This document shows positions 28,983 through 49,629 of a DNA stretch of 64,000 bases, piece by piece. Both the position numbers and the translations under genes were made by a program. The stretch is from the NCBI GenBank assembly GCA_950097015.1, contig CATNEN010000039.1:14074001-14138000 (forward strand), given 5' to 3'. The notes below the pieces were generated by a model. The model searched no databases. It was not told the DNA's origin and saw only the letters and a list, made by a program, of their open reading frames with translations. How positions within the stretch are numbered: the stretch's first letter is position 1; each line of letters opens with the position of its first letter. The stretch comes from Macrostomum hystrix (taxonomy: Eukaryota; Animalia; Platyhelminthes).

Positions 28983-30252
28983 GGAGAGTAGTCAGAGATG
29001 AGAGTAGACGGAGGAGAGACTAGACAGAGGAGAGACTAGACAGAGGAGAGACTAGACAGAGGAGAGAGTACACAGAGGAGAGAGTAGACAGAGGAGAGAA
29101 TAGACAGAGGAGAGAGTAGACATAGGAGAGAGCAGACAGAGGAGAGAATAGACTGAGGAGAGAGTACACATGAGAGTGTACACAGAGGAGAGTAGACAGG
29201 AGAGAGCAGACAGAAGAGAGAGTAGACAGAGGAGAGAGTAGACAGAGGAGAGAATAGACAGAGGAATGAGTAGACAGAGGAGAGACTAGACAGAGGAGAG
29301 AGTAGACATAGGAGAGAGCAGACAGAGGAGAGAATAGACAGAGGAGAGACTAGACTGAGGAGAGAGTACACATGAGAGTGTACACAGAGGAGAGTAGACA
29401 GGAGAGAGCAGACAGAGGAGAGAGTAGACAGAGGAGAGACTAGACGGAGGAGAGACTAGACAGAGGAGAGAGTACACAGAGGAGAGAGTACACAGAGGAG
29501 AGAGCAGACAGAGGAGAGAGCAGACAGAGGAGAGAGCAGACAGAGGAGAGAGCAGACAGAGGAGAGAGCAGACAGAGGAGAGAGCAGACAGGAGAGAGCA
29601 GACAGAGGAGAGAGCAGACAGAGGAGAGAGCAGACAGAGGAGAGAGTAGACAGAGGAGAGAGTAGACAGAGGAGAGACTAGACAGAGGAGAGAGTAGACA
29701 GAGGAGAGACTAGACAGAGGAGAGAGTACACATGAGAGTGTACACAGAGGAGAGTAGACAGGAGAGAGCAGACAGTGGAGAGAGCAGACAGAGGAGAGAG
29801 TAGACAGAGGAGAGAGTAGACAGTGGAGAGAGCAGACAGAGGAGAGAGTAGACAGAGGAGAGAGCAGACAGAGGAGAGAGTACACAGAGGAGAGAGTAGA
29901 CAGAGGAGAGACTAGACAGAGGAGAGAGTAGACAGAGGAGAGAGTAGACAGAGGAGAGACTAGACAGAGGAGAGAGTAGACAGAGGAGAGAGTAGACAGA
30001 GGAGAGACTAGACAGAGGAGAGAGTAGACAGAGGAGAGAGCAGACAGAGGAGAGAGTAGACAGAGGAGAGAGTAGACAGGAGAGAGCAGACAGAGGAGAG
30101 AGTAGACAGAGGAGAGATTAGACAGAGGAGAGAGCAGACAGTGGAGAGAGCAGACAGAGGAGAGAGCAGACAGAGGAGAGAGTAGACATAGGAGAGAGTA
30201 GACAGAGGAGAGACTAGACAGAGGAGAGAGCAGACAGAGGAGAGAGCAGACA
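28983..30252. repeat. Polypurine about 18-bp minisatellite (GACAGAGGAGAGAGTA..)
   Basis: Begins just after the putative PDIA3 polyA signal (AATAAA near 28931). Confidence 0.95.
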
Positions 30253-31118
30253 GAAGGACGGAAGGAAGGCATTGAATCGAAAATATCTATTCGCATATCT
30301 AAATTAGTTCCTTGCCTTGTCCCATCCCTATGAGGTTATTCGGGAGAATTGCAAATCAAGTTGAAAGTGTTTAGCCAACAGGTGTGTCATCATGAAGCTG
30401 CTTGAGTGTCTTGTTTTTCATATTTCTGTGACATTGCATACGTGCCTACCTGGGATTCTTCAGTTGGGATTGCGCAATCAATCAGAGAAGATGCTACCGC
30501 AGATGTCAATCAGGACTGTGGATATTGTGGCTATATCTGATTATTTGACTGTCCACAATGCGTGCACTCATCCGTAGGCCTCTGCATAGCATGCGTGCCA
30601 CATTGGATATTTTCTGAAATTTTGTTCTGGAATTCCAAGCTTCGAATAAACAAAAATCAAAGCCGGAACTTTGCCTCGGCCACCTGCGGCTGCTGAACAG
30701 TAAAAAATTCAAGGGTGATAGATCAGGGACTTCTGTATCCTAGCATCTGTATTTTACTTGATACAGAAGTCCCTGAATAAATGAATCTAATTCTCAGCAT
30801 GTTCAGGATTGAGATGAATTTTGAGCTCAGTTAAACTTCCCACCTGCTGAGTCCGAATCCCAATTGGTCCTCCCACTTGTCTGTGAGGCCGCTAAGCTTC
30901 AGACTGTACCAGATTGTCTATGGCCTAGACCCCCCTGTTGCTGTAATTAGCTTTCTAAGAATGACAAGCCGTTAATCCGCTTTTAATAGTTTTCTGTCTG
31001 AGGGATTGTGAGCCTCTGTTAATGCTCGATTTCTGAGTGCGGTGGGTTGCAATGGCCGCTACATCTGAGTAGGGAGTCGCGAAGAGGGACTTATCTCGAT
31101 TGGAGGAAAATTGGAGAT

Positions 31119-32010
31119 TTAATAATAGAACGGTGATTTCTTTTATCACTCAGAATCGACAGGAGTATGCTGTAACCAAATGAAATCTTACATTTTGTGT
31201 TTGACCTCCGTTGTCTCATGCTGTTTAACAAACGCTTTAAAAAATCATATTTGACAATAATGATGCCACCTCTATTTTTGAATATTGTCAGTTCGCACCG
31301 ATTCTTGTCATTTCGCTGATTCTTGTCCATTCTATTAATAATAGAACGGTGATTTCTTTTATCACTCAGAATCGACAGGAGTATGCTGTAACCAAATGAA
31401 ATCTTACATTTTGTGTTTGACCTCCGTTGTCTCATGCTGTTTAACAAACGCTTTAAAAAATCATATTTGACAATAATGATGCCACCTCTATTTTTGAATA
31501 TTGTCAGTTCGCTGATTCTTGTCAGTTCGCACCGATTCTTGTCAGTTCGCACCGATTCTTGTCAGTTTACACCGATTCTTGTCAGTTCGCTGATTCTTGT
31601 CAGTTCGCTGATTCTTGTCATTTCGCTGATTCTTGTCAGTTCGCTGATTCTTGTCAGTTCGCTGATTCTTGTCAGTTTGCTGATTCTTGTCAGTTCGCTG
31701 ATTCTTGTCAGTTTGCTGATTCTTATCAGTTTGCTGATTCTTGTCATTTCGCTGATTCTTGTCAGTTCGCTGATTCTTGTCAGTTCGCTGATTCTTGTCA
31801 GTTTGCTGATTCTTGTCAGTTTGCTGATTCTTGTCAGTTTGCTGATTCTTGTCAGTTTGCTGATTCTTGTCAGTTCGCTGATTCTTGTCAGTTCGCTGAT
31901 TCTTGTCAGTTCGCTGATTCTTGTCAGTTCGCTGATTCTTGTCAGTTCGCTGATTCTTGTCAGTTCGCTGATTCTTGTCAGTTCGCTGATTCTTGTCAGT
32001 TCGCTGATTC
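31119..32010. repeat. 216-bp tandem duplication (31119-31334, 31335-about 31550) whose second copy expands into an 18-bp array (GATTCTTGTCAGTTCGCT)
   Basis: Both copies start TTAATAATAGAACGGTGATTTC. Copy 1 carries about 2.5 units of the 18-mer; copy 2 carries about 28. Confidence 0.92.
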
Positions 32011-32689
32011 CTATTAAATTATCTAAGCAGTGCTCTGAGTCGCAGAGTACAGGTCTATGGCTTAACTACCTCCCAAGAATTATCCCACAGTACACGTACC
32101 ATGGTGATGCAACATTGCCGACAATTTTCAATCAATTCTGTTTTACCAGACTCATAAATTGCAGAGCAGGAGATGAACAATGACCCGAGCGATTCGGTTT
32201 GGACATCCTGGCAAATATTGCGTTGAGGCAGAAAATTTCCCACAACTTCTTTTAGCAGAGAAGCTCATTAGCACCCTTGACTACCTGCCTGCCTGAGAAT
32301 CAATAGAAAATGACCATATTTTGGGGAGTGGGTTCCATAACAATAGCCTGGCAACGAGACTTTTTTGACACCTCGTGGCTCTCGCGTGTCAATGATAACA
32401 ATACTATTGTTATTTTTATTATTATTGATTGCATCTGAAACACATTTTCAGGTTCTGGCAATTAATAACAATTGAAGGCAAATTATAGCTCAATAATGCA
32501 GCCCTCAATTTTCTGTGATCAATGAAAATTCATTGCTTCTGTCACTTTTGTAGCTTTTTTGCTTTAGGACAAAGGAATATAATTGACGTGAACTCTGCAG
32601 TACAGCGAATTCATTAGGCATTGAAAATTCGGGATAATTATTGTTCTCGCTCAGTTTTTTGCTCAAATGCCTTTGAGACCATAATTGGT

Positions 32690-33598
32690 GGATATCAAGT
32701 CCACACCTGTTAGATATCAAGCCCACATCTGTTAGATATCAAGCCCACACCTGTTAGATATCAAGCCCACACCTGTTAGATATCAAGCCCACATCTGTTA
32801 GATATCAAGCCCACACCTGTTAGATATCAAGCCCACATCTGTTAGATATCAAGCTTAAACCTGTTAGATATCAAGCCCACACCTGTTAGATATTAAGTCC
32901 ACATCTGTTAGATATCAAGCCCACATCTGTTAGATATCAAGCTTAAACCTGTTAGATATCAAGCCCACACCTGTTAGATATCAAGCCCACACCTGTTAGA
33001 TATCAAGCCCACACCTGTTAGATATCAAGCCCACATCTGTTAGATATCAAGCTTAAACCTGTTAGATATCATGCCCACACCTGTTAGATATCATGCCCAC
33101 ATCTGTTAGATATCAAGCCCACACCTGTTAGATATCATGCCCACACCTGTTAGATATCATGCCCACACCTGTTAGATATCAAGCCCACATCTGTTAGATA
33201 TCAAGCCTACATCTGTTAGATATCAAGCTTAAACCTGTTAGATATCAAGCCCACACCTGTTAGACGTCAAGCCCGTATCTGTTAGATATCGATCCTACCT
33301 GTTAGATATTGATCCTACCTGTTAGATATTGATCCTACCTGTTAGATATTGATCCTACCTGTTAGATATTGATCCTACCTGTTAGATATTGATCCTACCT
33401 GTTAGATATTGATCCTACCTGTTAGATATTGATCCTACCTGTTAGATATTGATCCTACCTGTTAGATATTGATCCTACCTGTTAGATATTGATCCTACCT
33501 GATAGATATTGATCCTACCTGTTAGATATTGATCCTACCTGTTAGATATTGATCCTACCTGTTAGATATTGATCCTACATGTCAGATATTGATCCTAT
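32690..33598. repeat. Compound minisatellite: 22-bp (CCCACACCTGTTAGATATCAAG) switching near 33290 to 20-bp (ACCTGTTAGATATTGATCCT)
   Basis: Direct inspection. Confidence 0.95.
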
Positions 33599-34009
33599 AT
33601 TTATAACCTAAAATGCATTAAATGTTTTGTCATTTAGAACTTCTGACACAAATATTCACGGTTGAAATTGTCTTTAAATGGCGAATGATAATAACTTTTG
33701 TTATTCCAAATTAGTTTCAATGCCTTGACCGTTTTTCACAAGTTGAGAATGCAAAACAAAGAATTAAAAAACTGTCGAGTTTAGAGGTCAGAAAAGACGA
33801 CTGAAAAACTAGTTAAAGAGATTTGCCCCAGCAACAACATAAATTGGGGATTCTGAAGGCAGAAAGCGGGAAATAAATTAAGAATGTGATTTATAATCCC
33901 TGATTTCAATTCGCGTTGTTAAAGCTGATTGTGTAACAATTTACTGAACTGAAAACTGCTCGCTTGAAAGCGACAAATAGTGTGTGAAGACTGGACTGGC
34001 AAATAGCCA

Positions 34010-34765
34010 GTGGAGAGGAGAGGAGAGTGGAGAGCAGAGGGTAGAGAGCGGAGAGGGTACATAGCGTAGAGATTAGAGAGCGGTGAGAGTAGAGAGTGTA
34101 GAGAGTAGAGAGTAGAGAGTGTAGAGAGTAGAGAGTAGTGAGCGGAGAGAGTAGAGAGTAGAGAGCGGAAAGAGTAGAGAGTGGAAAGAGTAGAGAACGA
34201 AGAGAGTAGAGAGTGAAGAGAGTAGAGAGTGGAGAGAGTAGAGAGTGGAGAGAGTAGAGAGCGGAGAGAGTAGAGAGAGGAGAGAGTAGAGAGCGGTGAG
34301 AGTAGAGAGAGTAGAGAGCTGAGAGAGTAGAGAGAGGAGAGAGTAGAGAGCTGAGAGAGTAGAGAGAGGAGAGAGTAGAGAGTAGAGAGCGGAGAGAGTA
34401 GAGAGCGGAGAGAGTAGAGAGTAGAGAGAGTAGAGAGTAGAGAGTAGAGAGTAGAGAGTAGAGAGAGTAGAGAGTAGAAAGTAGAGAGTAGAGAGAGTAG
34501 AGAGTAGAGAGTAGAGAGTAGAGAGCAGAGAGAGCGGAGAGAGTAGAGAGCGGAGAGAGCGGAGAGAGGAGAGAGTAGAGAGCGGAGAGAGTAGAGAGCG
34601 GAGAGAGTAGAGAGCGGAGAGAGCAGAGAGAGGAGAGAGTAGAGAGCGGAGAGAGTAGAGAGCGGAGAGAGTAGAGAGCGGAGAGAGTAGAGAGAGGAGA
34701 TAGTAGAGAGCGGAGAGAGTAGAGAGCGGAGAGAGTAGAGAGCGGAGAGAGTGCAGAGCGGAGAA
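34010..34765. repeat. Polypurine 9/18-bp repeat (GAGAGTAGAGAGCGGA)
   Basis: Direct inspection. Confidence 0.92.
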
Positions 34766-35699
34766 TTCGAGAGAAAGTAGGTGTATTGTCTCAGCCCATC
34801 CAATCATGGTGAGAGGGTCTCCTCTGGTTTTACCTGACTCCAATATGGCAAACAGTTCAACGCAATGTTTCTTGAAACTGCAGCTGCCTATGGCAAGCAA
34901 CCATAAGAGGATACATTAAGATCCAATTTATCCCATATTACTCCCTTATCCACTTCCCAATTTAGTATTGTGTGCGATGCAAATATTGGGACAAAACTGA
35001 CTGGCGCGGCTAAACAAACAGATAAAAAACGAAGAAAACGAAACAAGACTAGAAAAAGATTCGATATGTGATTGGTGCCGGTTCAGTATCCATGTCTGTG
35101 GCATCCTGTGATTTGGCTTAGATTTCTTAGAAACCAAACACAGTCGGGGAGATCTAGGCACATAGTTTGAGTTTGAGTTCATAAACCTTTGAGTATATTT
35201 CTAATTGAATAAAATCTGTGCTATCTTCTCCAAAGGCCTAAATTCTGGTAAAATAATTTTTCTAAATAAGCAACATCAAAATTGCGAAATCTCAAAATTT
35301 CCAAGATTAATTGCAGTTCACACTACAAGCACTAGCACAGTTGAGGATCTGTGCCGCAGTCACAGAGCTGTCACAGTGAATTCCCAATTGCCTAAAACTT
35401 CACACCTGTTCTATCCAGCTCATTGTGCTACCATTTTGTTTCTAGGGGCCTCGGGTCAGACGACCTGAGTCACCGTTCAGGTGTCAGCAAGCATTTAGTG
35501 AATTCGATGCGTTTAGAAATTAGTCAGTGAAAAGTGAAATCTACCAGAATAATAACAAAGTGAAGGACCATCTTGATCACATTGACTCTTGAATTGATCA
35601 TGTTGACACTTTGAGTTGAGTTCAGCTAAAACAAGAAGTCAGAGTGTGGTCAACCTGGACTCAAAATCAGAGCCAGAAGTTTAACAAGTTCTTACTCAC

Positions 35700-35948
35700 A
35701 GATATTACAGACAGTAGCAGATTTACAGGCAGTAACAGATGCACAGACAGTAACAGATTTACAGACAGTAACAGACTTACAGACAGTAACAGATTTACAG
35801 ACAGTAGCAGATTTACAGGCAGTAGCAGACTTACAGACAGTAACAGACTTACAGACAGTAGCAGATTTACAGACAGAAACAGATTTACAGACAGTAACAG
35901 ATTTACAGACAGTAACAGACTTACAGACAGTAACAGACTTACAGACTG
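35700..35948. repeat. 18-bp minisatellite (ACAGACAGTAACAGATTT)
   Basis: About 13 copies. Confidence 0.92.
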
Positions 35949-36392
35949 CTGTGGGAAAATTAATTCAGCAATATTGTACTCGTAATAACTAAGAAAATGG
36001 GGCTCTGTTGTAAAAAATGCGTTGCCTTAGATTCTTGCATTTTCGACTGACGAAATTGCAATTTATAATCTTAATTTGTTCAGGCCAGGATCGCAATTAA
36101 GCTAGAGAACTCCAATAGATAACAGTTTTAGGTGATTTATTGCTGCCTTTGATTTTAACCGCCTTGTCGTTTTATTATTTTCGGACGGAAGCGGCCTCTA
36201 AATGAAGTCACCCTACAGGTAAGGCTCAGGTAAAATTATTATACCTCACACTTACTGTGTGAAACCCAACCTCTCAGATAATTAGATAACTGCTTGCGGT
36301 CGTAAAAATATTGTTGCTATGATAGCTGCACAATAGCTATGCTGTTAATAGGTTCGATTTTTATCTAAGTTATGAATCACTGTGTCCATTAA

Positions 36393-37473
36393 TGTGTCCT
36401 CCGCTCCCTTCAGTGTGTCCTCCGCTCTCTTCAGTGTGTCCTCCGCTCCCTTCAGTGTGTCCTCCGCTCTCTTCAGTGTGTCCTCCGCTCCCTTCAGTGT
36501 GTCCTCCGCTCCCTTCAGTGTGTCCTCCGCTCCCTTCAGTGTGTTCTCCGCTCCCTTCAGTGTGTCCTCCGCTCTCTTCAGTGTGTCCTCCGCTCCCTTC
36601 AGTGAGTCCTCCGCTCCCTTCAGTGTGTCCTCCGCTCCCTTCAGTGTGTCCTCCGCTCTCTTCAGTGTGTCCTCCGCTCCCTTCAGTGTGTCCTCCGCTC
36701 CCTTCAGTGAGTCCTCCGCTCCCTTCAGTGTGTCCTCCGCTCCCTTCAGTGTGTCCTCCGCTCCCTTCAGTGTGTCCTCCGCTCCCTTCAGTGAGTCCTC
36801 CGCTCCCTTCAGTGAGTCCTCCGCTCCCTTCAGTGTGTCCTCCGCTCTCTTCAGTGTGTCCTCCGCTCCTTTCAGTGTGTCCTCCGCTCTCTTCAGTGTG
36901 TCCTCCGCTCCCTTCAGTGAGTCCTCCGCTCTCTTCAGTGTGTCCTCCGCTCCCTTCAGTGTGTCCTCCGCTCCCTTCAGTGTGTCCTCCGCTCTCTTCA
37001 GTGAATCCTCCGCTCCCTTCAGTGTGTCCTCCGCTCCCTTCAGTGAGTCCTCCGCTCCCTTCAGTGTGTCCTCCGCTCCCTTCAGTGTGTCCTCCGCTCC
37101 CTTCAGTGTGTCCTCCGCTCCCTTCAGTGTGTCCTCCGCTCTCTTCAGTGTGTCCTCCGCTCCCTTCAGTGTGTCCTCCGCTCTCTTCAGTGTGTCCTCC
37201 GCTCCCTTCAGTGTTTCCTCCGCTCCCTTCAGTGTGTCCTCCGCTCTCTTCAGTGAGTCCTCCGCTCTCTTCAGTGTGTCCTCCGCTCTCTTCAGTCTGT
37301 CCTCCGCTCCCTTCAGTGAGTCCTCCGCTCCCTTCAGTGTGTCCTCCGCTCCCTTCAGTGTGTCCTCCGCTCCCTTCAGTGTGTCCTCCGCTCCCTTCAG
37401 TGTGTCCTCCGCTCCCTTCAGTGTGTCCACCGCTCCCTTCAGTGAGTTCTCCGCTCCCTTCAGTGAGTCCTCC
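36393..37473. repeat. 21-bp minisatellite (TGTGTCCTCCGCTCCCTTCAG), about 51 copies
   Basis: Direct inspection. Gives spurious repeat ORFs in several frames. Confidence 0.95.
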
Positions 37474-38249
37474 ATTTAGGCAATGGCAAAAATGGTAAGC
37501 CAGGATGTCGCACAAAAATTGGCCCAAGCGCAACACTGACAGCTCACAATGATCTCACTGATTGCTCAGCAGTGGTTGCTCAGCATTGTCAGATTCACAA
37601 TGAGTTTGGAAATCAGTCTGTAAATATTTATTATTGTTTCGCAAGGGATATTTTGATTACATTTTATTATTGAGTATGGTGAGATTTCATATCAACATCT
37701 CCATATTTTCGATTGAATCTGGAGTTTTAAACAAAATAACAACAATAACAACAATGGCTGTCATTGTTTAACTATGCAGTCGTGTTCAGCAATGGCTGCT
37801 AGCTCCATAAAAACCGTGAATTTTATGAAAAAGTTGGTGTTTATAGAATTCTGTCACCTCACTCTGAGGATGTCAAGGAGCTTGTGAAATTCAAGACTCG
37901 AACCCATAACATGGGATTTGAATTATTATTCCAGTTGGCTATAGTTTACAAATGCACATGTGTCATCTCCATTTACAGTCTCGAAGATGCTTTGACAATA
38001 CTTGGTGCAATAAACACGATAGGGAATGACACTTTTTCTTTTGTGTCATGTTTCTGTGGGATCTGGGCTCTCACTCCATGGGTCTTTGAGAATGGGAATT
38101 GAATGAGAGATGTTTGATCTAAACTAATGCATCACCACGTGTGAGGGTTGCGTGCCTGAGGAATTGATGGGACACTGAGCAGCCTGAGCAGTTTGAAGAT
38201 TTCTAAGAATGCGAAAACCTGAGATTTGTGGGACAGAGACGGAGAGAGT

Positions 38250-38940
38250 GGCAGGGTGAGAGGGAGAGTCACGGGTGAGAGGGGGAGTCACAGGTGAGAG
38301 GGAGAGTCACAGGTGAGAGGGAGAGTCACAGGTGAGAGGGAGAGTCACGGGGTGAGAGGGAGAGTCACGGGGTGAGAGGGAGAGTCACAGGGTGAGAGGG
38401 AGAGTCACAGAGTGAGAGTCACAGGGTGAGAGGGAGAGTCACGGGGTGAGAGGGAGAGTCACGGGGTGAGAGGGAGAGTTACGGGGTGAGAGGGAGAGTC
38501 ACAGGGTGAGAGGGAGAGTCACAGAGTGAGAGTCACAGGGTGAGAGTCATAGGTGAGAGTCACAGGGTGAGAGGGAGAGTCACAGGGTGAGAGGGAGAGT
38601 CACAGGGTGTGAGGGAGAGTCACAGGATGAGAGGGAGAGTCACGGGGTGACGAGGACGGTCACAGGGTGAGAGTGAGAGTCATAGGGTGAGAGGGAGAGT
38701 TACGGGGTGTGAGGGAGAGTCACGGGGTGAGAGGGAGAGTCACGGGGTGAGAGGGAGAGTCACGGGGTGAGAGAGAGAGTCACAGGGTGAGAGGGAGAGT
38801 CACAGGGTGAGAGGGAGAGTCACAGGGTGAGAGGGAGAGTCACAGGGTGAGAGGGAGAGTCACAGGGTGAGAGGGAGAGTCACAGGTGAGAGGGAGAGTC
38901 ACATGTGAGAGGGAGAGTCACAGGGTGAGAGGGAGAGATG
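38250..38940. repeat. About 20-bp G-rich minisatellite (GGGTGAGAGGGAGAGTCACA)
   Basis: About 35 copies. Confidence 0.93.
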
Positions 38941-39054
38941 AAGAATCTACAACTGCAAGCTAATTTTCTGAAGCGATTTTCAGTGTCACAGAAATTCCTC
39001 AAAATGATTTTCATTGGCTCACCCAGAGTGTGCGCAAGTTCGTGTGCCGGACAT

Positions 39055-39190
39055 ACGGAGGGGCGGAGGGTCAGGGCTGAGGTTGACTCTCCCTCCGAGG
39101 TGTGAAAATCGCTCTCCAGCCAATGAAAAGGCGTCAACGAGCCCCTAAGGCCCAACCCCCATGGGGCCACTGCGGCTATATTATTGTGAT
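39055..39190 (+). promoter_or_regulatory. Candidate core promoter of zinc-finger gene A
   Basis: GC box GGGCGG at 39061, CCAAT at 39120 and TATATT at 39177, upstream of the ATG at 39261. Confidence 0.4.
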
Positions 39191-39260
39191 CTGGGAGTCA
39201 CGAAATATCCAAATTGTGTGCTAAGCAACCAAAACTTATTTGAAGCCAAGAAGACCTGCC

Positions 39261-39401
39261 ATGTTTCCGAAATTCGGCAACAGCTCTGACTACTACCTGG
39301 CACAGTACTACCTTGGTGCTGCGGCTTCTGGCGGTCTTGAAGGTGCGCCTTTGCTCACTTCTCCATTGGACTATCGTGCTCAGTACTTTCAGCCTGCTGC
39401 A

Positions 39402-39439
<38 letters not shown>

Positions 39440-41125
39440 CAGAGTGCACCATGCAGGTGAGATTTGACTGCAATAAGTTTTTTCTGTTTTGCGACTTAAT
39501 CCGCCCTCCTTCCGCTCCCATCAGCTACTTGATCCGCCCTCCTTCCGCTCCCATCAGCTACTAGATCCGCCCTCCTTCCGCTCCCATCAGCTACTAGATC
39601 CGCCCTCCTTCCGCTCCCATCAGCTACTAGATCCGCCCTCCTTCCACTCCCATCAGCTTCTAGATCCGCCCTCCTTCCGCTCCCATCAGCTACTAGATCC
39701 GCCCTCCTTCCGCTCCCATCAGCTACTAGATCCGCCCTCCTTCCGCTCCCATCAGCTACTAGATCCGCCCTCCTTCCGCTCCCATCAGCTACTAGATCCG
39801 CCCTCCTTCCGCTCCCATCAGCTACTAGATCCGCCCTCCTTCCACTCCCATCAGCTTCTAGATCCGCCCTCCTTCCGCTCCCATCAGCTACTAGATCCGC
39901 CCTCCTTCCGCTCCCATCAGCTACTAGATCCGCCCTCCTTCCGCTCCCATCAGCTACTAGATCCGCCCTTCTCCACTATCATTAGCTTTTTGATTCGCCT
40001 CAAGTTCTGTCAACTGAAAATGACTAAGTCAGTAGTTTAGTAAATCCTAAGTCATCCTAAAAATGACTTAGGATGATTAGGATGACATTTAAAAAATGAC
40101 ATCCTAAAATTCTTATTCTTAAAAGTCTTATTCCTAATTTTCCGTATCAAAACTCACCACAAACAGTCCAGCATCAGCAGCTGCCGCAGTCTGCTGAGCA
40201 TCGACAGTCGAGTCTGTTGCGCAAGCCGACACCACTGCGACCAATGACACTGCAGCATCAGCAGCATCAGCAGCATCAGCAACATCAGCAGCATCAGCAG
40301 CATCAGCAGCATCAGCAGCATCAGCAGCATCAGCAGCATCAGCAGCATCAGCAGCATCAGCAGCAGCAGCAGCAGCAAACATCATCCTGGCAGTTTCAAC
40401 TTCCATCAACTGCAGCCAGCGGCACAGAGAACCAGCCGCCTCCACCAGGCCACCCGAGGTCAGAGCCCATCGGCTTTCGTCCAGTTCAAGGAGCTGCTGT
40501 CAAACGTCCGTCGACCTGGCTGACGGACGATGGCCGAGCTTCAAAGCTTGCGGCACTGTACGCTCCTGTGACAGACGCTCCGCTTGACCTGCGGGTCGTC
40601 CGACCAAAGAGACACTCAGCTGACACCCTTGTCGACACCGCCTCTCAGGCCACTTTCCCTGAAGAAGACGGTGTCGACGATGCCGACGATGGGAGACGGG
40701 CCTTCAGTGCCGGCGGTCAGCCAGCAATGTGCCACCAGTGCCGCCAGACCTTCCTCTGTCTGCGGGACCTCAACGGCCACTTCGAGAAGTCTCACCTCTC
40801 CTCTCTCATGTCCGAGTTCGACAACACCAAATCCTGGAAGTCGTCGGCAGTCGACAATAAGGAGCTGAACGTCGAGGCGACGATGGTGCGGCTGGAGAAC
40901 GGCGACACGATCGGGTTCAAGTGCCCGGAGTGCGACTACTTCGCCAAGTGGCCGACGGAGCTGCAGAAGCACATCATGGTGCACTCGAATGCCAGGCCGC
41001 ACGTGTGCGTTGTCTGCGGCTGCACCTACAAGTGGAAGTGGGACCTCGGCCGGCACTTCGACAAGTCGCACGAGTCTGGCGAGATGCCCAATCCGTACAA
41101 GAAGAACACGGTCAAGCCGGCTCTT

Positions 41126-41184
<59 letters not shown>

Positions 41185-42513
41185 GAGACTCAGTGACTTC
41201 TGCGGCATGAGTCACTTGATGCAACAGCCAACTGTCTATGGCCAGTTTGAACTAGCTGCTAAAGTTGAGGTGAGTTTCAAAATCACAAATGACCTTAAGC
41301 TAACTGTATTAACAATTGACAAATGGCTATGATTTGATTTTCAATTGTTAGACCTACCTTGCCAATAGTCCTACAATTCTCATCTGTTAGACACAATCCT
41401 CACCTGTTAGACACAATCCTCACCTGTTAGACACAATCCTCACCTGTTAGACACAATCCTCACCTTTTAGACACAATCCTCACCTGTTAGACACAATCCT
41501 CACCTGTTAGACACAATCCTCACCTGTTAGACACAATCCTCACCTGTTAGACACAATCCTCACCTGTTAGACACAATCCTCACCTGTTAGACACAATCCT
41601 CACCTGTTAGACACAATCCTCACCTGTTAGACACAATCCTCACCTGTCCCTATTAATGCTTTAAGCAGAGACAGCCGCAGCCGCAGCCGCAGCCAGCTCT
41701 GTCGGCTCCTGCTGAACATGATAGGCAGACAGTCTCTCAGCTTCATCGTCAAGGCCAGGTGTTCCAGACTCCCGAAGCTTCCACTCCTGTTGACGCATCA
41801 TCGGGCACATCAACAGCCAGCTGGCCATTTGCCTGCCCGATCTGCGGCGCCAAAGCTCGCTGGAAGTCCGAGCTGAAGTCACACCTTGTCAATCACAGCA
41901 ACTTTAAGCCCTACAGGTGCAGATTCTGTGACTACCGCAGCAAATGGCGTTGGGACGTTGTTAAGCACCTGAAACGGTGTCCGGCAAGTCGAGACACGCC
42001 AGCCGACAGCGCGGACAGAAGCGGAGTTGTCTATGACCAGCCTGATCCGGAGCTGTTTAGCAACGAAGCCGAGGTACTGCTCTACTCTGGTGGCAGCGGC
42101 TGCGGCAGCGACGCATCCAGAAGGTCTACTTCGGCTCTGACCGCATCCGGGTCTGGCTCTGGCGGGCAGGTGAGTTTTTCTATTTGTGATTCCTAACTGT
42201 TACAGACTATATTCCCACCTGTTACAGACTATATCCTCGCCTGTTACAGACTAGATTCTCACCTGTTACAGACTAGATTCTCACCTGTAATGCCTATCAT
42301 TCACTGGCAAGCAACTAAGCAACCATAACAATGTCCTTTGCTCAGGTACTCAGTGGATCGTCAGGCTGTTCAGCCACTTCGCAATCGTCCAGCCGTCGAC
42401 GCCGAGCAGCCGATGCGGGCAGGTCGAGGCCTTCGCCGCCAGTCCAGGCGTCGCCGACTCAGCTGCCCGCTGCCAACGCCGTCTCAGACGAAATTGAAAC
42501 AAAAGATGTCTGA
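39261..42513 (+). CDS. C2H2 zinc-finger transcription factor A (5 fingers in two clusters, PLDL CtBP-type motif, polyA/polyQH/polyQ tracts), about 655 aa
   Basis: Exons 39261-39456, 40167-41269, 41669(or 41666)-42169 and 42346-42513 have matching phases and GT-AG ends. Fingers: CHQC..H..H, CPEC..H..H, CVVC..H..H, CPIC..H..H, CRFC..H..C. Confidence 0.82.
39497..39970. repeat. 33-bp minisatellite (GATCCGCCCTCCTTCCGCTCCCATCAGCTACTA) in intron 1 of ZF gene A
   Basis: About 14 copies. Confidence 0.95.
41375..41647. repeat. 20-bp minisatellite (CACCTGTTAGACACAATCCT) in intron 2 of ZF gene A
   Basis: About 13 near-perfect copies. A related 22-bp repeat lies at 42195-42290. Confidence 0.95.
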
Positions 42514-43589
42514 GCAGATCACTGGATTATGCAGTCACTGAGCTTTACATGCGATGAGAAAATAGTGTTATGAATTCAGCATCTGATTACCTGTTCAAAT
42601 CACCTGTTCGTTTTTGCACTGTGCTGGCATTCTTTGTCTAAATATTTTCCGGCGATAATGTTACAATCTGTCTACTGTTTTGCGGTGTTCAGTAGTCCGT
42701 ATGGAGTCTTTTTCGCAGTCTTTTTGTCCATTTAGATTTATCTTCGTTCTGTTTTTCTATCGTCTACTTCTTATATTAAAAACTTTGAAATCAATTATTT
42801 TGTCGCATAGCTACAAATAGCTACATCTGTTAGACTCAAAATTTTTTATAGATCTTAAATTGTAAGCCTTTTTACTTAATAAATATAATTCTTGTAATAA
42901 CATCGTGTTTTTATCTTTGCTTTCTAAGAAAATCAATAAAAATGGTAAGCTATATGTCAGTTTAGTGTTTTCTGCATTCATTTATTGATCAAGTGATCCA
43001 GTAGATTGCAAATATTTACTGTCGCCGCTTAGCAGTGAACTTATTGCTTCGTACAGTTAAACAACTTTTATTTTACTGATTCATATCGAACTTGTGCATT
43101 GAGAAAGAAGTATTGCTTAACAAATGGGTAATATTTAGATAATATAGTTAATAATCTGAAAAGCATTCGCTCGTATTGTAATTTCGCGGTGCAAAAATAC
43201 GAAAGTTAACAAATCAGAAAGTTGAATTATGTGAATTTGTGAATCTGTGAATTATGAATTCGCCAATTGTGTTGCAACTAGACTAGTAACAACTTCGCAT
43301 TGTGCGTTAAAAAACTAATAGTGTACAACCGCATGGTCCTACTGTTAGTAAGAGAAAAATTATTCTAAAAAATGTGATCCATGATCATTATCAAGGTAAT
43401 TCGAAAAGCAAGTAAATCAAGAAAAGTCAGGAAACGTTAAAAACTTCACTCTGAAATTTCTGTTCATTTTATGTGTTTCTCAGATAAATAATTCAAATTT
43501 GTAATTTCAAAAGCTAGTAAATAAAGTGAAGACATGTTTTTAATAGAAAATTTCTCGAGCGATGTTAGAACTAAGGGACTTGGGGATTT

Positions 43590-44260
43590 TGAGATGGAAT
43601 TTTGGGATACGGGATTTTGCGATACGGGATTTTGGGATACGGGATGTTGGCAAATCAGACTTTGGGATATGGGACTTTAGGATATGGGACTTTTGGGATA
43701 TGGGATTTTGGGATATGGGATTTTGGGATATGGGATTTTGGGATATGGGATTTTGGGATATGGGATTTTGGGATATGGGATTTTGGGATATGGGATTTTG
43801 GGATATGGGATTTTGGGATATGGGATTTTGGGATATGGGATTTTGGGATATGGGATTTTGGGATATGGGATTTTGGGATATGGGATTTTGGGATATGGGA
43901 TTTTGGGATATGGGATTTTGGGATATGGGATTTTGGGATATGGGATTTTGGGATATGGGATTTTGGGATATGGGATTTTGGGATATGGGATTTTGGGATA
44001 TGGGATTTTGGGATATGGGATTTTGGGATATGGGATTTTGGGATATGGGATTTTGGGATATGGGATTTTGGGATATGGGATTTTGGGATATGGGATTTTG
44101 GGATATGGGATTTTGGGATATGGGATTTTGGGATATGGGATTTTGGGATATGGGATTTTGGGATATGGGATTTTGGGATATGGGATTTTGGGATATGGGA
44201 TTTTGGGATATGGGATTTTGGGATATGGGATTTTGGGATATGGGATTTTGGGATATGGGA
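43590..44260. repeat. 15-bp G-run repeat (GGGATTTTGGGATAT) between the convergent ZF genes
   Basis: About 38 perfect copies plus a degenerate left edge. Confidence 0.96.
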
Positions 44261-44343
44261 AATAGAACAAAGCATGAAGAAAAAATGATTCTACCACTGC
44301 ACACGAGTAAAAGAGATTAAGCTTGTACCAGGTTGATTCCGGG

Positions 44344-44484
44344 TTAAGCAAATCCCTCATTAAACTGGCCCAATGGCCGGCTCTGCAGGTGCGCCGTTCG
44401 CACGTGATTAGCTAGGTCGGCGCCGCTCTTGGCGATGTGGCCGCACTGGCCGCAAGGCAATAGCCGCAGCTTCGTGCCACCGCT

Positions 44485-44549
<65 letters not shown>

Positions 44550-47500
44550 TGCTGTTGTTGTTTGAGATCGACTCGACGGGCGTTGATGATGGTCGGCACT
44601 GGAGTTTTTGGGGCGTGGACATTGTGCTGGTTTGGCTGATCTCAGCATTGTGATAATTGGATGGCGATCGTTGGATTGGGATCGAAAGATAGGGATCATT
44701 GGAAAGGGATCATAGGATGTGGGTAATAGGATGGGGATCATAGGATGGGGATCAAAGGATGGGGATCATAGGATGGGGATCAAAGGATGGAGATCAAAGG
44801 ATGGGGATCATAGAATGGGGATCATAGGATAGGGATTATAGGATGGGGATAATATAATGGGGATCGTATAATGGTGATCATTGGATGGGGATCATAGGAT
44901 GGGGATCAAAGGATGGAGATCATATGATGTGGGTCATAGGATGGGGATTATAGGATGGGGATCATTGGATGGGGATCATATAATGGGGATCATTGGATGG
45001 GGATCATAGAATGGGGATCATTGGATGGGGATCATAGAATGGGGATCATAGGATAGGGATTATAGGATGGGGATCATATCATGGGGATCATATAATGGTG
45101 ATCATTGGATGGGGATCATAGGATGGGGATCATAGAATGGGGATCATAGAATGGGGATCATAAGATAGGGATCATAGGATGGGGATCATAGAATGGGGAT
45201 CATAGGATGCGGACCATAGGATGGGAAGAGGAATTGAGATCTTGATGGAGATCTTAAATGTATTTAACAGTCAGAAGACAGAACTAACCTCATCTAAGTC
45301 GTCGGGGTCTTCGCTGGAGCAACGCAGTAGCGGCTGCTGCTTCTGCTGTTGCTGCTGCTGCCTAATTACTGCGGTGTCGTCCGCGTACAAAATAGCCTCA
45401 GCTTCGTTGCTATAGAGCTCGGGATCCGGCGGATCGTAGAGAACAAAGGCCTGTATCTCCTTGTTACTGCCGCACGAGCCAGAGGACTCGATGTCGCCGA
45501 TGTCGCTGCAATCGCCAGCAGCGGAGCAGCCGAGAGCGGCTCGCTTGCCCGTGCACCGCTTCAGGTGTTTAACAACGTCCCACTTCCATTTGCTTCTGTA
45601 GCTGCAGAATTTGCAGCGGAATGGCTTAAAATTGCTGTGATTTATCAGGTGAGACTTCAGCTCCGACTTCCACCTGGCCTTTGCTCCGCAAATCGGGCAA
45701 GCGTATGGCAGGGACTCGGCGCTGTCCTCCTTGGCTGCAGCGCTGCCACTAGATCCTCCGACCGCAACAGCGGCCCTCCGACCCGAGGATTTGACAGAGT
45801 CCTGATGGCCAGTAGAAGGCGCTGACAGGTTGCCAGCTCTAGAAACTGTCTGTTGTGGAACTTGCGACGATGAAGGCGGTGGCGGTGGCGGCGGCGGCGG
45901 CGGCGGCGGCGGTGGTGGTGGTGGTGGTGGCGGAGGCGGAGGCGGCTGCAGGGCTGATGCGCGCATACGCATTAGAAGTTCTTCAACCCGTGGAGACTGA
46001 TGCAGCTGATGAAGCTGATGGTGATGCTGATGATGGTGGCCGAATCCTGAGCTACCGGCGAAAATCGGGTGCCTGCCATAAGCCAGCTGATGAGCGACTT
46101 GACCGAAGCTGCTGTTATAGTAGGACATCAGTTCCCGGCCTGCGGCGACGGCTGCCGCAGCGGCTGCAGCGGCGGCTGCTGCTGCCGCGGTCGAAGACGT
46201 GGACGAAGCCGCTCCATTTGCCTGAGGACGCATTGGCAGCGGTGGTGGAGTCGGACGCGGCAGTTGCGGCGGCGCCGGTGGCGGTGGCAGCGTCGGTCTT
46301 GGGATGAATGGCGGAGGAAATAGCATTCCCGTGTGACGACGAATCGACTCGAATGCGAATTGCTGCTGCTGTTGCTGCTGCTGCTGTTGCTGCTTCTGCT
46401 GTTGTTGCTGTGATTGCGATTGCTGCATCGTTGGAGACGGCTGCTGCTGCTGCTGCACAGTGCCGCAAGCCCCAGCCGGCTTGACTGTGTTCTTCTTGTA
46501 CGGATTGGGCATCTCGCCAGACTCGTGCGACTTGTCGAAGTGCCGGCCGAGGTCCCACTTCCACTTGTAGGTGCAGCCGCAGACAACGCACACGTGCGGC
46601 CTGGCATTCGAGTGCACCATGATGTGCTTCTGCAGCTCCGTCGGCCACTTGGCGAAGTAGTCGCACTCCGGGCACTTGAACCCGATCGTGTCGCCGTTCT
46701 CCAGCCGCACCATCGTCGCCTCGACGTTCAGCTCCTTGTTGTCGACTGCCGACGACTTCCAGGACTTGGTGTTGTCGAACTCGGACATGAGAGAGGAGAG
46801 GTGAGACTTCTCGAAGTGGCCGTTGAGGTCCCGCAGACAGAGGAAGGTTTGGCGGCACTGGTGGCACGACGTCACGGGCTGCCGGCCGCCGCCGCCGCTG
46901 CCGCCGCCAGCGCCACCGTTCTTACATCCGCTGCCGTCGCGACCATCGTCAGAGTCGACGTCCTCAACGTCCGTGGCCTCGGCACCCGCGACGGCGGTGG
47001 CGGAGGGACTCTGGAAGATCTCAGACGCCCTCGACGTTCCCTGGCGGCTGCGCACAATGGCTGACAGCATCGTCGGACTCACCAGGCCGCTCTCATCGCT
47101 ACCGCCACCGCCAGAGAATTGACCTGCGCGTTCCTCAGCTTCCTGTTCGTCTTCGTCATCGTCATCGTGAACCTCGGCGTCGAAATCGACCTCGGCTGTT
47201 GACAGATCCAGCGGAGTCACCTCTGCCGAGGTATCCCGATGCCCGACACTCAAATCCAGCGGCGTCTCCGGCTGCGGGGACGACGGGGTTGTAACCACCG
47301 GCTGCGACCGGTGATGCGATGGCACGGCTGTCGAAGTCGGTGGGGGCGTGAAGCCCCAGAAGGGCATCATGAGCGGCAGGAACTGCTGCGCCAACTCCGT
47401 CCTGGCCCGCTTCAGCTGCGCTTCGCCGAGCGTCTCGGCAGGACTCCGCTGCGGCCGCGACGGCTTCCTGCGGGAGCTGCTGGAATGAGCCGATGCGTTG

Positions 47501-47571
47501 CCATAGCAACCGATGTCAAGGCCAGGGCAGCCGGGACCAGACTCGAGTCGTGGCTCAGGGGATTCTGACAT
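44344..47571 (-). CDS. C2H2 zinc-finger transcription factor B, paralog of A (6 fingers, two PLDLS motifs, polyP/Q/A/G tracts), about 859 aa
   Basis: Large exon 47571-45289 (donor GAG|GTTAGT) plus terminal exon 44640-44344 encoding CGQCGHIAKSGADLANHVRTAH. The acceptor is an inferred GAG. An upstream acceptor CCCACAG at 47606 implies additional 5' exon(s). Confidence 0.8.
44690..45225. repeat. 14-bp G-rich minisatellite (GGATGGGGATCATA) in the intron of ZF gene B
   Basis: About 38 copies. Confidence 0.93.
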
Positions 47572-49629
47572 GCTCGCTCGCAGGCTCAGAAACACTTGGT
47601 CGATTCTGTGGGAGATTTAAAAAATGTCATCAGATTGGCCCCACAAAATATTCCACTCTCCCCTCTGCTTCAAGTTACTCAATTTCCATTCCCCAGAGGT
47701 AGAGGCGGAAGAGCACAAAGAGAGCAAGGCGGCGGATAAATGAAGTGGGATCTGAAAGCAGACTAAAGGTTTTGCAGGTGAAACTTCGTTAGCCTCCCCG
47801 CGTCTGCTCCACAATAGCCCGAATTAACTATCCGATCAGGAGAGGCCGAAAGCCCTTTTTTGAAAAAAAGAATCCTCGGCTAACAAATTGAAGTAATCTT
47901 GCTTGACTGCAAACGGACTCAACTGACTGGCGTGTGGCAGACCGCGCGGGTTACTCAGCTCACTGATGAAGCAAAGAATTTAGGCGAGGCACAGAGACAG
48001 GGGAGGTCTTGTTTGATCGAGTGGACTCAAGTTGAAACACTTCTTCTTCCTCTTCTTCTTCTCATTTTCCTGTGTCTCTTGTTACCCTTTGCCTGTTGCC
48101 TGTCGCCGCGCGGAGTCTTTCAAACTCACAGCAGGAGACGCAGTTGATGAGGCGTGGGAGAACGATTCAGTCCTTTGTTTTGTATAAGAAAATGAGACCT
48201 AGGAAGAGAGAGTATTAATTGGCTGTCAGTGTCTCCGCTTCCCAAATCCTTGAAAAAAAATCCCTGAGTCCGACAGAACTGCCGCGAGTTCGCTTAGCAT
48301 TTTCATGCCTTCTGCTCTCCTGTGTTTTTTCGCCTCCCAAACTTTTCTTTTCCACTTGGCTACGCGCGCCATTCTGACCGCAGGCCTGAAATAATGATGC
48401 CGCGGGTATTGATGGGGCTGATCTGGCCGGGAGCCTTGGTGAGAGCTGAAACAATAGCCGCGGGAACACCCCATACTTAATGAGACCGTCAGATTTTGCC
48501 ACTGTAACTTCTTGTCTAGCTTCTCTAGAAGAGAAAAAAAATTGAATAGCTGCTCAAAGCACGACATTCCTCTAATCAAGCCCCCCAAAATGGAAGACAA
48601 TAGAATAGAAATCGTGACAGAATGAGAGAAGCCCAGGTATTTTGATATCTTCTTCTCGAGATTGCTGCAAAGACAGTTGCGAATTTTGGAGTCTGTGGAA
48701 TTTTTGTCTATACAGTCGTTTGACATGTGACACGTTCTAGCCAACCGGTACAGCTCTGCCGCTCTGAGTAGGGGGGGGGCAGATTTTGTCAAAGACCCAA
48801 CAAGAAGCACAGAGAGGTAATCCGATATATTGGGCCCTCCAAACCTGCCCCTAGAAGAAGAAGCTGTTTGCAGTTTGTTTCAATCCGCTCATTATATGAT
48901 GATGGAAGGCACGGACCCAGCCGTCTGGCCAACAACAGAAGCAACGGCAAATAACTCAAACTGCAGTTGGTGCAATCCCTGTAACAGGACACTGCGCGGG
49001 AGCATTGTTTAAAGGAAAGACTTGCTGGAAGAGTTGAAGCACGTGTCTTTTGGGAATGCAACATCAGGAGTGTCTTATCCGTGTGCTCAACTGCCCTGCC
49101 CGGAGCTGAGTAATGCAGCTCTTCGAATTAATAGTCGAGTTTGAATTGAGTAGCTGCACTATAGGGTGCTGTAGCGATTTCAGATGTTGCTTGTGCTGCT
49201 ACACGCACAGACAATTTAAAAGAAACATTTTTGCTTCAAGACACTAAAGCAAACCACTTCTCTCCACCCCTCTTCCTGTATTTCTCCCCTAAAATCTCAT
49301 AAGTCCTATAGAATCACCTGCTATTTAGTTAGAAATCCCATTTTGGGATTATTCAAAGTTTTACTTACGAAAAGAAATATTTTAAAGCTCGAATTGGGAA
49401 TGTAATATTTGCAGGCATTCCAAATTAGTTAATAATCCCAATTCTGGGACAGAATGCTCATTCCAGATGTTGCTCGCTTCAGAGAAGAGACCGATATAGT
49501 TTCTTTGTAGCACCTGCTTGCCTTGTGGAAACAGCTTCTGCCTAATCGCTGCTGAGTTGTCACCGACCCAGAATCTAGACTCTAGTACGCCTGCCCAACT
49601 GCTCACAATGTTCCAGCCAATAACTAAAA

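What the first reader, a model, noticed from the sequence alone, without database searches (positions are those of the whole stretch)
40729..46867. Convergent ZF paralogs share a 394-bp near-identical inverted tract: domain-restricted gene conversion and a potential long hairpin
Seen: 40729-41122 (+) and 46867-46474 (-) are both 394 bp and differ at only 4 sites by my reading, all synonymous (CAG/CAA, AAA/AAG, AAT/AAC, ACG/ACA). The tract covers exactly the first three-finger cluster. The second cluster keeps similar protein but has many synonymous differences (GGC GCC AAA GCT CGC versus GGA GCA AAG GCC AGG). The linkers are unalignable and intron positions differ (A has an intron between the clusters, B does not). 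Inference: an old inverted duplication in which arm-to-arm conversion keeps one DNA-binding module identical while the rest diverges. Read-through across the abutting 3' ends would fold into about 394 bp of dsRNA able to yield siRNAs against both genes. Recombination between the tracts would invert the 5.3-kb spacer and swap the C-terminal halves in frame, giving chimeric A/B factors.
Basis: partly seen in the sequence, partly recalled or inferred. Interest (0 to 1): 0.82.

Follow-up and report, generated by a model that had tools for sequence, protein, structure and literature searches.

The report
Gene conversion between flatworm zinc-finger paralogs
Two old, tail-to-tail copies of a flatworm zinc-finger regulator gene have recently copied a 394-base stretch, encoding their first DNA-binding module, from one to the other; this is a clean example of an ordinary, well-known process.

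Summary
Window 40729-41122 (+) and 46474-46867 (-) are 394-nt inverted arms that differ at 4 sites, all third-codon-position synonymous transitions.

They lie in two convergent C2H2 zinc-finger genes, A and B, of a Macrostomum flatworm. By size and contig count the assembly matches M. hystrix. It is not human.

In the tract dS = 0.05. In the second finger cluster of the same two genes dS = 1.5, and against a third paralogue on another contig the same codons give dS of about 1. The boundaries are abrupt. Recent interlocus gene conversion between old inverted paralogues is the best explanation (confidence 0.85).

Raised GC3 in the tract (120 of 131 codons, against 101 of 131 in paralogue C) hints at repeated, GC-biased conversion but does not prove it.

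New here: a third copy, A', lies 207 kb away in a 13.5-kb inverted segmental duplication. It carries an in-frame 576-nt deletion that removes exactly this module.

The hairpin-RNA, siRNA and inversion ideas are geometrically possible but untested. The cross-species test could not be run.

The scan noted the same process before, for ovo paralogues elsewhere in this genome (s1-355513).

This is a new member of a known kind, of low to moderate interest.

The parts
40729..41122 (+). Converted tract, arm in gene A. It encodes fingers 1-3 (C-x2-C-x12-H-x3/4-H) plus an 18-codon conserved tail.
46474..46867 (-). Converted tract, arm in gene B. The protein is identical to A's and the DNA differs at 4 synonymous sites.
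40217..41269 (+). Gene A, first coding exon as read here. The frame opens at 40217, the first ATG is at 40244, and the donor GAG|GTGAGT follows 41269. It has a His/Gln-rich N-terminus, one PLDLR motif, finger cluster 1 and (CAG)19.
41270..41665 (+). Gene A, inferred intron 1, holding a 20-nt minisatellite (41373-41647). The acceptor is at 41665/41666 or 41668/41669.
   Evidence: no RNA evidence
41666..42169 (+). Gene A, inferred exon 2, with finger cluster 2 (fingers 4-5, 41824-41993) and the DPPDPEL...NEAE tail. The donor GGGCAG|GTGAGT follows 42169.
42346..42513 (+). Gene A, inferred last exon (55 codons plus stop). It coincides with the diverged right edge of the A/A' duplication.
45271..47595 (-). 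Gene B, a single open frame of 774 codons. It has two PLDLS motifs, cluster 1 (the tract), a long low-complexity linker, cluster 2 (45540-45709) and a C-terminal tail.
41126..41183 (+). (CAG)19 immediately 3' of the tract in A. B has an interrupted CAG/CAA run at 46361-46410. The tract ends where the simple repeat begins.
41123..46473 (.). The 5351-nt spacer between the arms. It holds the 3' halves of both genes and 2.8 kb of intergenic minisatellites (15-nt array 43583-44260, 14-nt array 44659-45225).
40685..41260 (+). The 576 nt (192 codons, codon-precise) present in A but absent from the third copy A' at G000:C39:13.907 Mb. It contains the whole tract.
28974..42522 (.). Arm of a 13.5-kb inverted segmental duplication. 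The partner is G000:C39:13906526-13917907, about 190 kb away. Interior mismatch is 0.4-2.7%; the edges show 10.6% and 15.6%.

Best explanation
Genes A (+) and B (-) are old, tail-to-tail paralogues of a flatworm C2H2 zinc-finger transcription-factor family. The family has 3 + 2 fingers and an N-terminal PLDLS-type motif.

A double-strand break in one copy was repaired using the other copy, 5.35 kb away in inverted orientation, as template. This is non-allelic, or interlocus, gene conversion. It replaced about 394 bp.

The copied stretch coincides with the first finger cluster for a simple reason. This is the only part of the two genes that still had enough nucleotide similarity (about 80%, judged from paralogue C) for strand invasion and heteroduplex extension. 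It stops at unalignable sequence on the 5' side and at a CAG repeat on the 3' side.

Since the event, 4 synonymous changes have accumulated under purifying selection on both copies.

What is shown: the identity step, the silent-site contrast, the boundaries, and the family context. What is inferred: the repair mechanism, the direction (unknown), and recurrence (GC3 only suggests it).
For: Tract size and differences: 394 nt with 4 differences.

Silent sites: dS 0.051 and dN 0 over 131 codons in the tract, against dS 1.49 and dN 0.21 over 89 codons of cluster 2 in the same gene pair.

No general nucleotide constraint: the same 131 codons compared with paralogue C (G000:C30) give dS 0.90-1.04 at dN 0.10, so this domain is not held at the nucleotide level.

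Statistics: Fisher p = 7e-28 and binomial p = 2e-30.

Boundaries: both are abrupt, inside continuous open frames whose flanks are homologous but strongly diverged.

Selection since the event: all 4 differences are synonymous, where only about 81 of 393 sites are synonymous. This points to real mutations filtered by selection, not sequencing error.

Copy number: only two copies at 99% or more exist in the 220-Mb assembly.

GC3: 120 of 131 in both arms, against 101 of 131 in C (p = 0.0019), 108 of 129 in D, and 0.43-0.73 in the flanks of A and B.

Same region: the neighbouring 13.5-kb A/A' inverted duplication shows the same kind of mosaic, with a homogenised interior and diverged edges.

Literature: conversion between adjacent inverted paralogues is documented, for example C. 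elegans hsp16 and hsp70 pairs (passages read in PMC3966223).
Against: No DNA of a related species could be obtained (look-up of encoding contigs closed). No A- or B-type protein of another Macrostomum turned up in 3 of 3 protein searches. The classical test, tract grouping by species and flanks by paralogue, was therefore not run.

The tract is wholly coding, so there are no non-coding sites to separate conversion from constraint.

GC3 is raised in this domain in all four paralogues. Part of the GC3 signal is therefore intrinsic to the domain, and codon bias lowers all the dS values.

Only one assembly was available (PacBio CLR, canu, Arrow and Pilon polishing), and no reads could be inspected.
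Confidence: 0.85

Rival explanations
1. Assembly or polishing artefact: the two arms are really more different, and short-read polishing (Pilon) or mis-mapped reads homogenised them.
For: The assembly was built from PacBio reads with canu and polished with Arrow and Pilon. Haplotigs had to be purged (section 7 of PMC10468722). Some other zinc-finger hits occur as identical-scoring pairs on C10 and C41, so some redundancy remains in the assembly.
Against: Arms about 80% identical would not cross-map, and 80% is the level seen in cluster 2 and against paralogue C. So polishing cannot turn 20% divergence into 1%.

The tract has sharp borders inside unique sequence. The whole 6.1-kb structure is short enough to be spanned by single long reads.

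The 4 remaining differences are all synonymous transitions, which fits real mutations under selection.
Confidence: 0.04
2. Selection at the nucleotide level, with no DNA transfer. Extreme codon bias or an overlapping functional RNA or DNA element would hold the silent sites of this module constant in both genes.
For: GC3 is very high in the tract (0.92). It is raised in the same domain of paralogues C (0.77) and D (0.84). The protein is invariant.
Against: Paralogue C encodes a nearly identical protein core yet differs at 42-45 of about 80 synonymous sites. There is no Rfam family in 39000-48500. The identity ends abruptly at both borders instead of decaying. Constraint of this strength on 127 of 131 third positions would be unprecedented for a coding exon; that last point rests on general knowledge, not on a tool result.
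Confidence: 0.04
3. Functional inverted repeat: the identity is maintained because the arms work as a unit. They could be a hairpin-RNA source of siRNAs against the family, or recombination sites for an invertible 5.35-kb segment that swaps the C-terminal halves. Conversion would then be the means, not the whole story.
For: The two arms in one transcript would pair over 393 (+ strand) or 391 (- strand) positions, at -906 and -898 kcal/mol. Both arms are in the same codon phase, so a crossover would give in-frame chimeras; this follows directly from the coordinates. hpRNA loci made of inverted gene fragments are known in Drosophila (titles and abstracts only).
Against: There are no transcript, small-RNA or structural-variant data.

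A hairpin transcript would have to run more than 6 kb, past polyA-like hexamers at 42775, 42878 and 42935 (+) or at 43544, 43072 and 42986 (-).

Copy A' carries the A-type N-terminus and the A-type cluster 2 in cis, as A does. So no exchange of halves has happened since A and A' were last homogenised.

Conversion alone explains the data.
Confidence: 0.05

Closest known systems
Interlocus (non-allelic) gene conversion between adjacent inverted paralogues, e.g. C. elegans hsp16 and hsp70 pairs (passages read in PMC3966223). Recalled, not from any call: Drosophila Hsp70 pairs, and human gamma-globin genes, whose tract is bounded by a simple repeat.
   Same: Old duplicates lie on one chromosome a few kb apart in opposite orientation. 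A short, sharply bounded stretch is near-identical amid diverged sequence. One border sits at a simple-sequence repeat, here (CAG)n.
   Different: The host is a flatworm and the genes encode a transcription factor. The tract is limited to one of two finger clusters. A third copy lacks the converted module altogether.
Large inverted repeats or palindromes homogenised by arm-to-arm conversion (human Y-chromosome palindromes; recalled, not from any call)
   Same: The 13.5-kb A/A' inverted duplication has a 97-99.6% identical interior and edges only 81-87% identical. That is the pattern expected from ongoing conversion inside an older duplication.
   Different: The spacer is about 190 kb. The arms are mostly minisatellite-rich upstream DNA plus one gene. 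Identity is far lower than in Y palindromes.
Hairpin-RNA (hpRNA) endo-siRNA loci of Drosophila (titles and abstracts seen)
   Same: Inverted copies of a gene fragment could fold into long dsRNA that targets the parent genes.
   Different: Here both arms are parts of intact, selected coding genes. The loop would be 5.35 kb with polyA-like signals inside. No small-RNA evidence exists.
Flatworm C2H2 zinc-finger family, labelled by automatic annotation 'zinc finger protein 40' or 'HIV1 enhancer-binding protein 2' in cestodes, and A0A1I8IPN4 in M. lignano
   Same: The first finger cluster shows 47-84% identity. The KWPTELQKH core occurs in 28 of 30 homologues checked, and a PLDL[S/R] motif upstream of the fingers in 22 of 30. 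The 3 + 2 finger layout is shared with P0002 and P0003.
   Different: No member has a tested function. A link to Drosophila charlatan or to REST is only a recollection plus a sub-threshold Pfam hit (zf-C2H2_REST, 25.8 bits against a cut-off of 27).

Membership tests
Interlocus gene conversion tract | A segment far more similar than the flanking homologous sequence of the same gene pair | tested here: met
   99.0% over 394 nt against 72% over 89 aligned codons of cluster 2, with unalignable linkers
Interlocus gene conversion tract | The drop is at silent sites and is not explained by protein constraint | tested here: met
   dS 0.051 in the tract against 1.49 in cluster 2. The same codons against paralogue C give dS 0.90-1.04.
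Interlocus gene conversion tract | Significant clustering of identity (GENECONV-type test) | tested here: met
   Fisher p = 7e-28; binomial p = 9e-50 and 2e-30. GENECONV itself was not run.
Interlocus gene conversion tract | Phylogenetic incongruence: the tract groups by species and the flanks by paralogue | not testable with these tools
No A- or B-type protein of another Macrostomum appeared.
GC-biased, recurrent conversion (concerted evolution) | Excess GC at silent sites confined to the converted stretch | tested here: inconclusive
   GC3 is 0.92 in the tract against 0.43-0.73 in the flanks and 0.77 in paralogue C (p = 0.0019). But the domain is GC3-rich in all four paralogues, and the polarised counts are 2 W-to-S against 2 S-to-W on the A/B branch.
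hpRNA / endo-siRNA locus | Inverted arms able to form long dsRNA | tested here: met
   393 pairs, -906 kcal/mol
hpRNA / endo-siRNA locus | One transcript spanning both arms, and small RNAs mapping to them | not testable with these tools
   No RNA data. PolyA-like hexamers lie between the genes.
C2H2 zinc-finger transcription factor | C2H2 fingers above Pfam threshold | tested here: met
   PF13909 zf-H2C2_5 scores 57 bits in B and 41.6 bits in A exon 1 (cut-off 27). PDB sequence hits are generic, ZNF568 and CTCF.
CtBP-recruiting repressor (PxDLS motif; the motif's meaning is recalled) | A conserved PLDLS-type motif | tested here: met
   A has PLDLR, B has two PLDLS, C has PLDLT and PLDLS. 22 of 30 flatworm homologues carry it. 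Binding to CtBP was not tested.
REST / charlatan family | REST-type finger above threshold | tested here: not met
   PF24540 scores 25.8 bits (cut-off 27) in B and 15.8 bits in A exon 2.

The most novel reading that the evidence does not exclude
The identity of the first DNA-binding module is actively maintained and serves a purpose. Recurrent, GC-biased conversion would keep A and B reading the same DNA sites while their other halves diverge. The inverted arms would also feed a hairpin or convergent-transcript siRNA loop that balances the dosage of the family. Copy A', which lacks exactly this module, would escape that loop. Occasional crossover in the tract would toggle the 5.35-kb segment and produce A/B chimeric factors.
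Probability: 0.05. Interest if true: 0.6.

Novelty: new member of a known kind. Interest (0 to 1): 0.25.

Why it matters
The locus is a clean, well-bounded case of domain-restricted conversion between old paralogues in a flatworm model genus. Together with the A/A' duplication and the ovo case noted earlier in the same genome, it suggests that non-allelic conversion between inverted copies is common in this genome.

This matters in practice. Trees or dS values from the finger domain will misdate these duplicates. Orthology calls and short-read mapping, RNAi or in situ probes aimed at this 394-bp stretch will hit both genes. It opens no long-standing question.

Tried and rejected
Cross-species test.
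- Three protein searches gave only the M. lignano orthologue of paralogue C and proteins of other flatworms: cluster 1 within B (18 hits of 729 candidates), cluster 2 within B (4 of 829), and cluster 1 within a 244-residue piece of A exon 1 (17 of 19).
- The representative search (17169 hits at E up to 0.001, 150 listed) carries no names and showed no closer relative than P0002 (56%).

Naming the family more precisely. Pfam gave only generic finger models, with REST-type below threshold. PDB sequences gave ZNF568 and CTCF. The ESM Atlas gave generic C2H2 clusters. A literature search for charlatan/REST/CtBP gave no paper describing this family (listing only). So the charlatan idea stays a recollection.

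Rejected: A acquired cluster 1 by insertion and A' shows the ancestral state. The 44 nt and 138 nt that flank the tract inside the 576-nt indel are homologous to B's flanks but old and diverged. A therefore had the region long before the conversion, and A' has a deletion.

Rejected: a separate, more recent A/A' conversion limited to the gene body. The gene body shows 0.4-1.1% mismatch, not clearly below the interior of the duplication at 0.9-2.7%. Only the edges stand out.

Older conversion between C and A/B. The centre of the tract is 89-96% identical in most 45-nt windows starting between 151 and 301. High GC3 in both genes makes that expected, so I do not claim it.

Other negatives. Rfam found no RNA family in 39000-48500. 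A search for Macrostomum plus 'gene conversion' found 9 papers, 8 listed, none about this by title or abstract start.

Not done. Supplementary files and the published M. hystrix gene models were not consulted because supplements are closed. They could confirm or change the exon structures given here.
Full report
OBSERVATION

The repeat finder reports one outstanding inverted pair in 38-50 kb: 40729-41122 and 46474-46867, 394 nt, 99% complementary, 5351 nt apart. A base-by-base comparison finds four differences, at 40747, 40831, 40858 and 41110 on the A arm. All four are third-codon-position transitions: CAG/CAA, AAA/AAG, AAT/AAC and ACG/ACA.

The reading frame gives 131 codons with three C2H2 fingers and an 18-codon tail. 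The second-best inverted pair is the second finger cluster, 41824-41993 / 45540-45709, 170 nt at 78%. Everything between and around these blocks fails to align or is low-complexity sequence. The one correction is that the tract is the finger cluster plus a short conserved tail.

WHOSE GENOME

The window is G000:C39:14074001-14138000 of an assembly of 220,453,370 bases in 42 contigs. The best protein match of the finger module is a Macrostomum lignano protein (A0A1I8IPN4, 84%), followed by trematode, cestode and monogenean proteins.

The abstract of Wiberg et al. 2023 gives about 220 Mb in 42 contigs for Macrostomum hystrix (PMC10468722). I infer that this is that assembly. It was built with PacBio reads, canu, Purge Haplotigs, Arrow and Pilon (section 7 read). 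It is not human.

THE GENES

Gene A runs on the + strand. As read here it has:
- a first coding exon to 41269;
- an intron holding a 20-nt minisatellite;
- an exon with fingers 4-5 ending at 42169;
- a second intron with a 22-nt minisatellite;
- a last exon at 42346-42513.

Gene B runs on the - strand as one open frame of 774 codons, 45271-47595. The two genes are convergent, and their stop codons are 2.8 kb apart.

Pfam finds zf-H2C2_5 fingers above threshold in both genes. The REST-type finger model stays just below threshold. PDB sequence matches and ESM Atlas matches are generic C2H2 proteins.

A, B and paralogue C carry PLDL[S/R/T] motifs upstream of the fingers. Of 30 flatworm homologues checked, 22 do as well. 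From memory, PxDLS is the CtBP-binding motif, so the family probably acts as a repressor. That is an inference.

I handled A exon by exon.

FAMILY IN THE GENOME

The tract DNA has four matches in the assembly: the two arms, paralogue C on C30 (82% over 2-378) and paralogue D on C38 (81% over 183-331). The protein search gives the same four as the only close members: 100, 100, 85 and 51% identity. The other 20 of 24 matches are at 48% or below, on shorter stretches. C is the orthologue of the M. lignano protein.

TEST OF CONVERSION

All values here are Nei-Gojobori estimates.

| Comparison | Codons | dS | dN |
|---|---|---|---|
| A vs B, tract | 131 | 0.051 (4 of 81 silent sites) | 0 |
| A vs B, cluster 2 | 89 | 1.49 | 0.21 |
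| A or B vs C, tract codons | 131 | 0.90-1.04 | 0.10 |

The duplication is therefore old, both copies are under purifying selection, and the finger module is free to change at silent sites in this family. Yet A and B are almost identical there.

With 4 of 394 differences against 75 of 267, Fisher p = 7e-28. At the A-C rate, P(4 or fewer differences) = 2e-30.

The 5' border lies inside a diverged but recognisably homologous stretch: GGQPAM in A against GGRQPVTS in B. The 3' border lies at the start of a CAG repeat.

That all four differences are synonymous, when only about a fifth of sites are, argues that they are real post-conversion mutations and that both genes are functional. At the three sites where paralogue C is informative, B keeps the C state, so A carries the new changes. 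Three against zero is not significant, and it says nothing about which gene was the donor.

RECURRENCE

GC3 is 120 of 131 in both arms. In the same codons it is 101 of 131 in C (p = 0.0019) and 108 of 129 in D. In 30-codon windows it steps from 0.43-0.73 in the flanks of A and B up to 0.87-1.0 inside the tract.

This is what GC-biased conversion would produce. But the domain is GC3-rich in all four paralogues. Polarised counts show loss of GC in C (16 S-to-W against 1) and in D (14 against 2), not gain on the A/B branch (2 against 2). I call this suggestive only.

A THIRD COPY

The search with B's cluster 2 found a further A-type copy at C39:13907142-13907324 (-), scoring exactly as A does. 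It belongs to a 13.5-kb inverted segmental duplication: window 28974-42522 against C39:13906526-13917907, about 190 kb away.

In unique stretches the mismatch rates are:
- interior: 0.4-2.7%;
- left edge (28974-29750): 10.6%;
- right edge (42289-42525, the last exon of A): 15.6%.

That pattern fits an older duplication whose interior has been homogenised.

Copy A' has the A-type N-terminus, with 2 amino-acid differences. Its cluster-2 frame reads identically to A's over the 145 residues, by eye. It lacks window 40685-41260, which is 576 nt or 192 codons, cut at codon boundaries, and it keeps the splice donor.

The deleted block contains the whole tract plus 44 nt and 138 nt of A-specific flank. 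Those flanks are old homologues of B's flanks. So A' has lost the module, and A did not gain it. Whether A' is expressed is unknown. No B-like copy lies next to A'.

THE FUNCTIONAL EXTENSIONS

If one RNA contained both arms, they would pair over 393 positions on the + strand (three G-U, one A-C) or 391 positions on the - strand, at -906 and -898 kcal/mol. This is trivially true of any such repeat.

Read-through would have to pass polyA-like hexamers at 42775, 42878 and 42935 (+) or at 43544, 43072 and 42986 (-). The hexamer positions do suggest that the 3' ends of the two genes meet, or even overlap, near 42.9-43.1 kb. That is a much shorter possible sense-antisense overlap, and it does not involve the tract.

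A crossover in the tract would invert 41123-46473 and join the halves in frame. This follows from the coordinates. But A and A' share the same linkage of halves, so no such exchange is recorded.

No Rfam family lies in 39000-48500.

KNOWN OR NEW

Conversion between adjacent inverted paralogues, and its dependence on distance and similarity, are textbook matters. I read passages on the C. elegans hsp16 and hsp70 pairs and on tract lengths in PMC3966223. Other titles were seen in the listing.

The library holds no paper on gene conversion in Macrostomum, judged by title or abstract start (9 papers hold both terms, 8 listed).

I did not test that note. The two notes near this finding in the window concern other things.

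VERDICT

The conversion reading is supported (0.85). Recurrence is suggestive. The hairpin, siRNA and inversion roles are untested and unlikely to be needed. It is a new member of a known kind, with interest 0.25.

Noticed in passing
window 28974-42522 and G000:C39:13906526-13917907: A 13.5-kb inverted segmental duplication about 190 kb apart. The interior shows 0.4-2.7% mismatch, but the edges show 10.6% and 15.6%, as if an older duplication were being homogenised. It consists of gene A plus about 10 kb of minisatellite-rich upstream DNA.
   Followed up: partly
L016 (G000:C39:13905642-13908824), equivalent of window 40685-41260: Copy A' of gene A has a codon-precise, in-frame 576-nt deletion. 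It removes finger cluster 1 and the polyQ run while keeping the splice donor. The result would be a protein with the N-terminus and cluster 2 only.
   Followed up: partly
window 44344-44709 (-): An open frame downstream of B's stop. It encodes a poly-Gly run and one C2H2-like finger (LPCGQCGHIAKSGADLANHVRTAH). B has a GTTAGT just before its stop codon, so this frame could be a further B exon reached across the 14-nt minisatellite. It could also be a separate small gene.
   Followed up: no
window 37006-50374: The region is unusually dense in minisatellites with periods of 14-33 nt and 14-45 copies. Examples are 38244-38937, 39499-39969, 41373-47 (that is, 41373-41647), 43583-44260, 44659-45225 and 49913-50374. 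Both inferred introns of gene A are built around such arrays, and array copy number differs between A and A'.
   Followed up: no
window 42775-43544: PolyA-like hexamers of the two convergent genes interleave: + strand at 42775, 42878 and 42935, - strand at 43544, 43072 and 42986. The 3' UTRs of A and B may therefore overlap as natural antisense transcripts.
   Followed up: no
G000:C10:491831-492328 and G000:C41:177314-177811: Other zinc-finger hits occur as identical-scoring pairs on contigs C10 and C41 in opposite orientation. This points to a retained haplotig or a recent duplication in the assembly.
   Followed up: no
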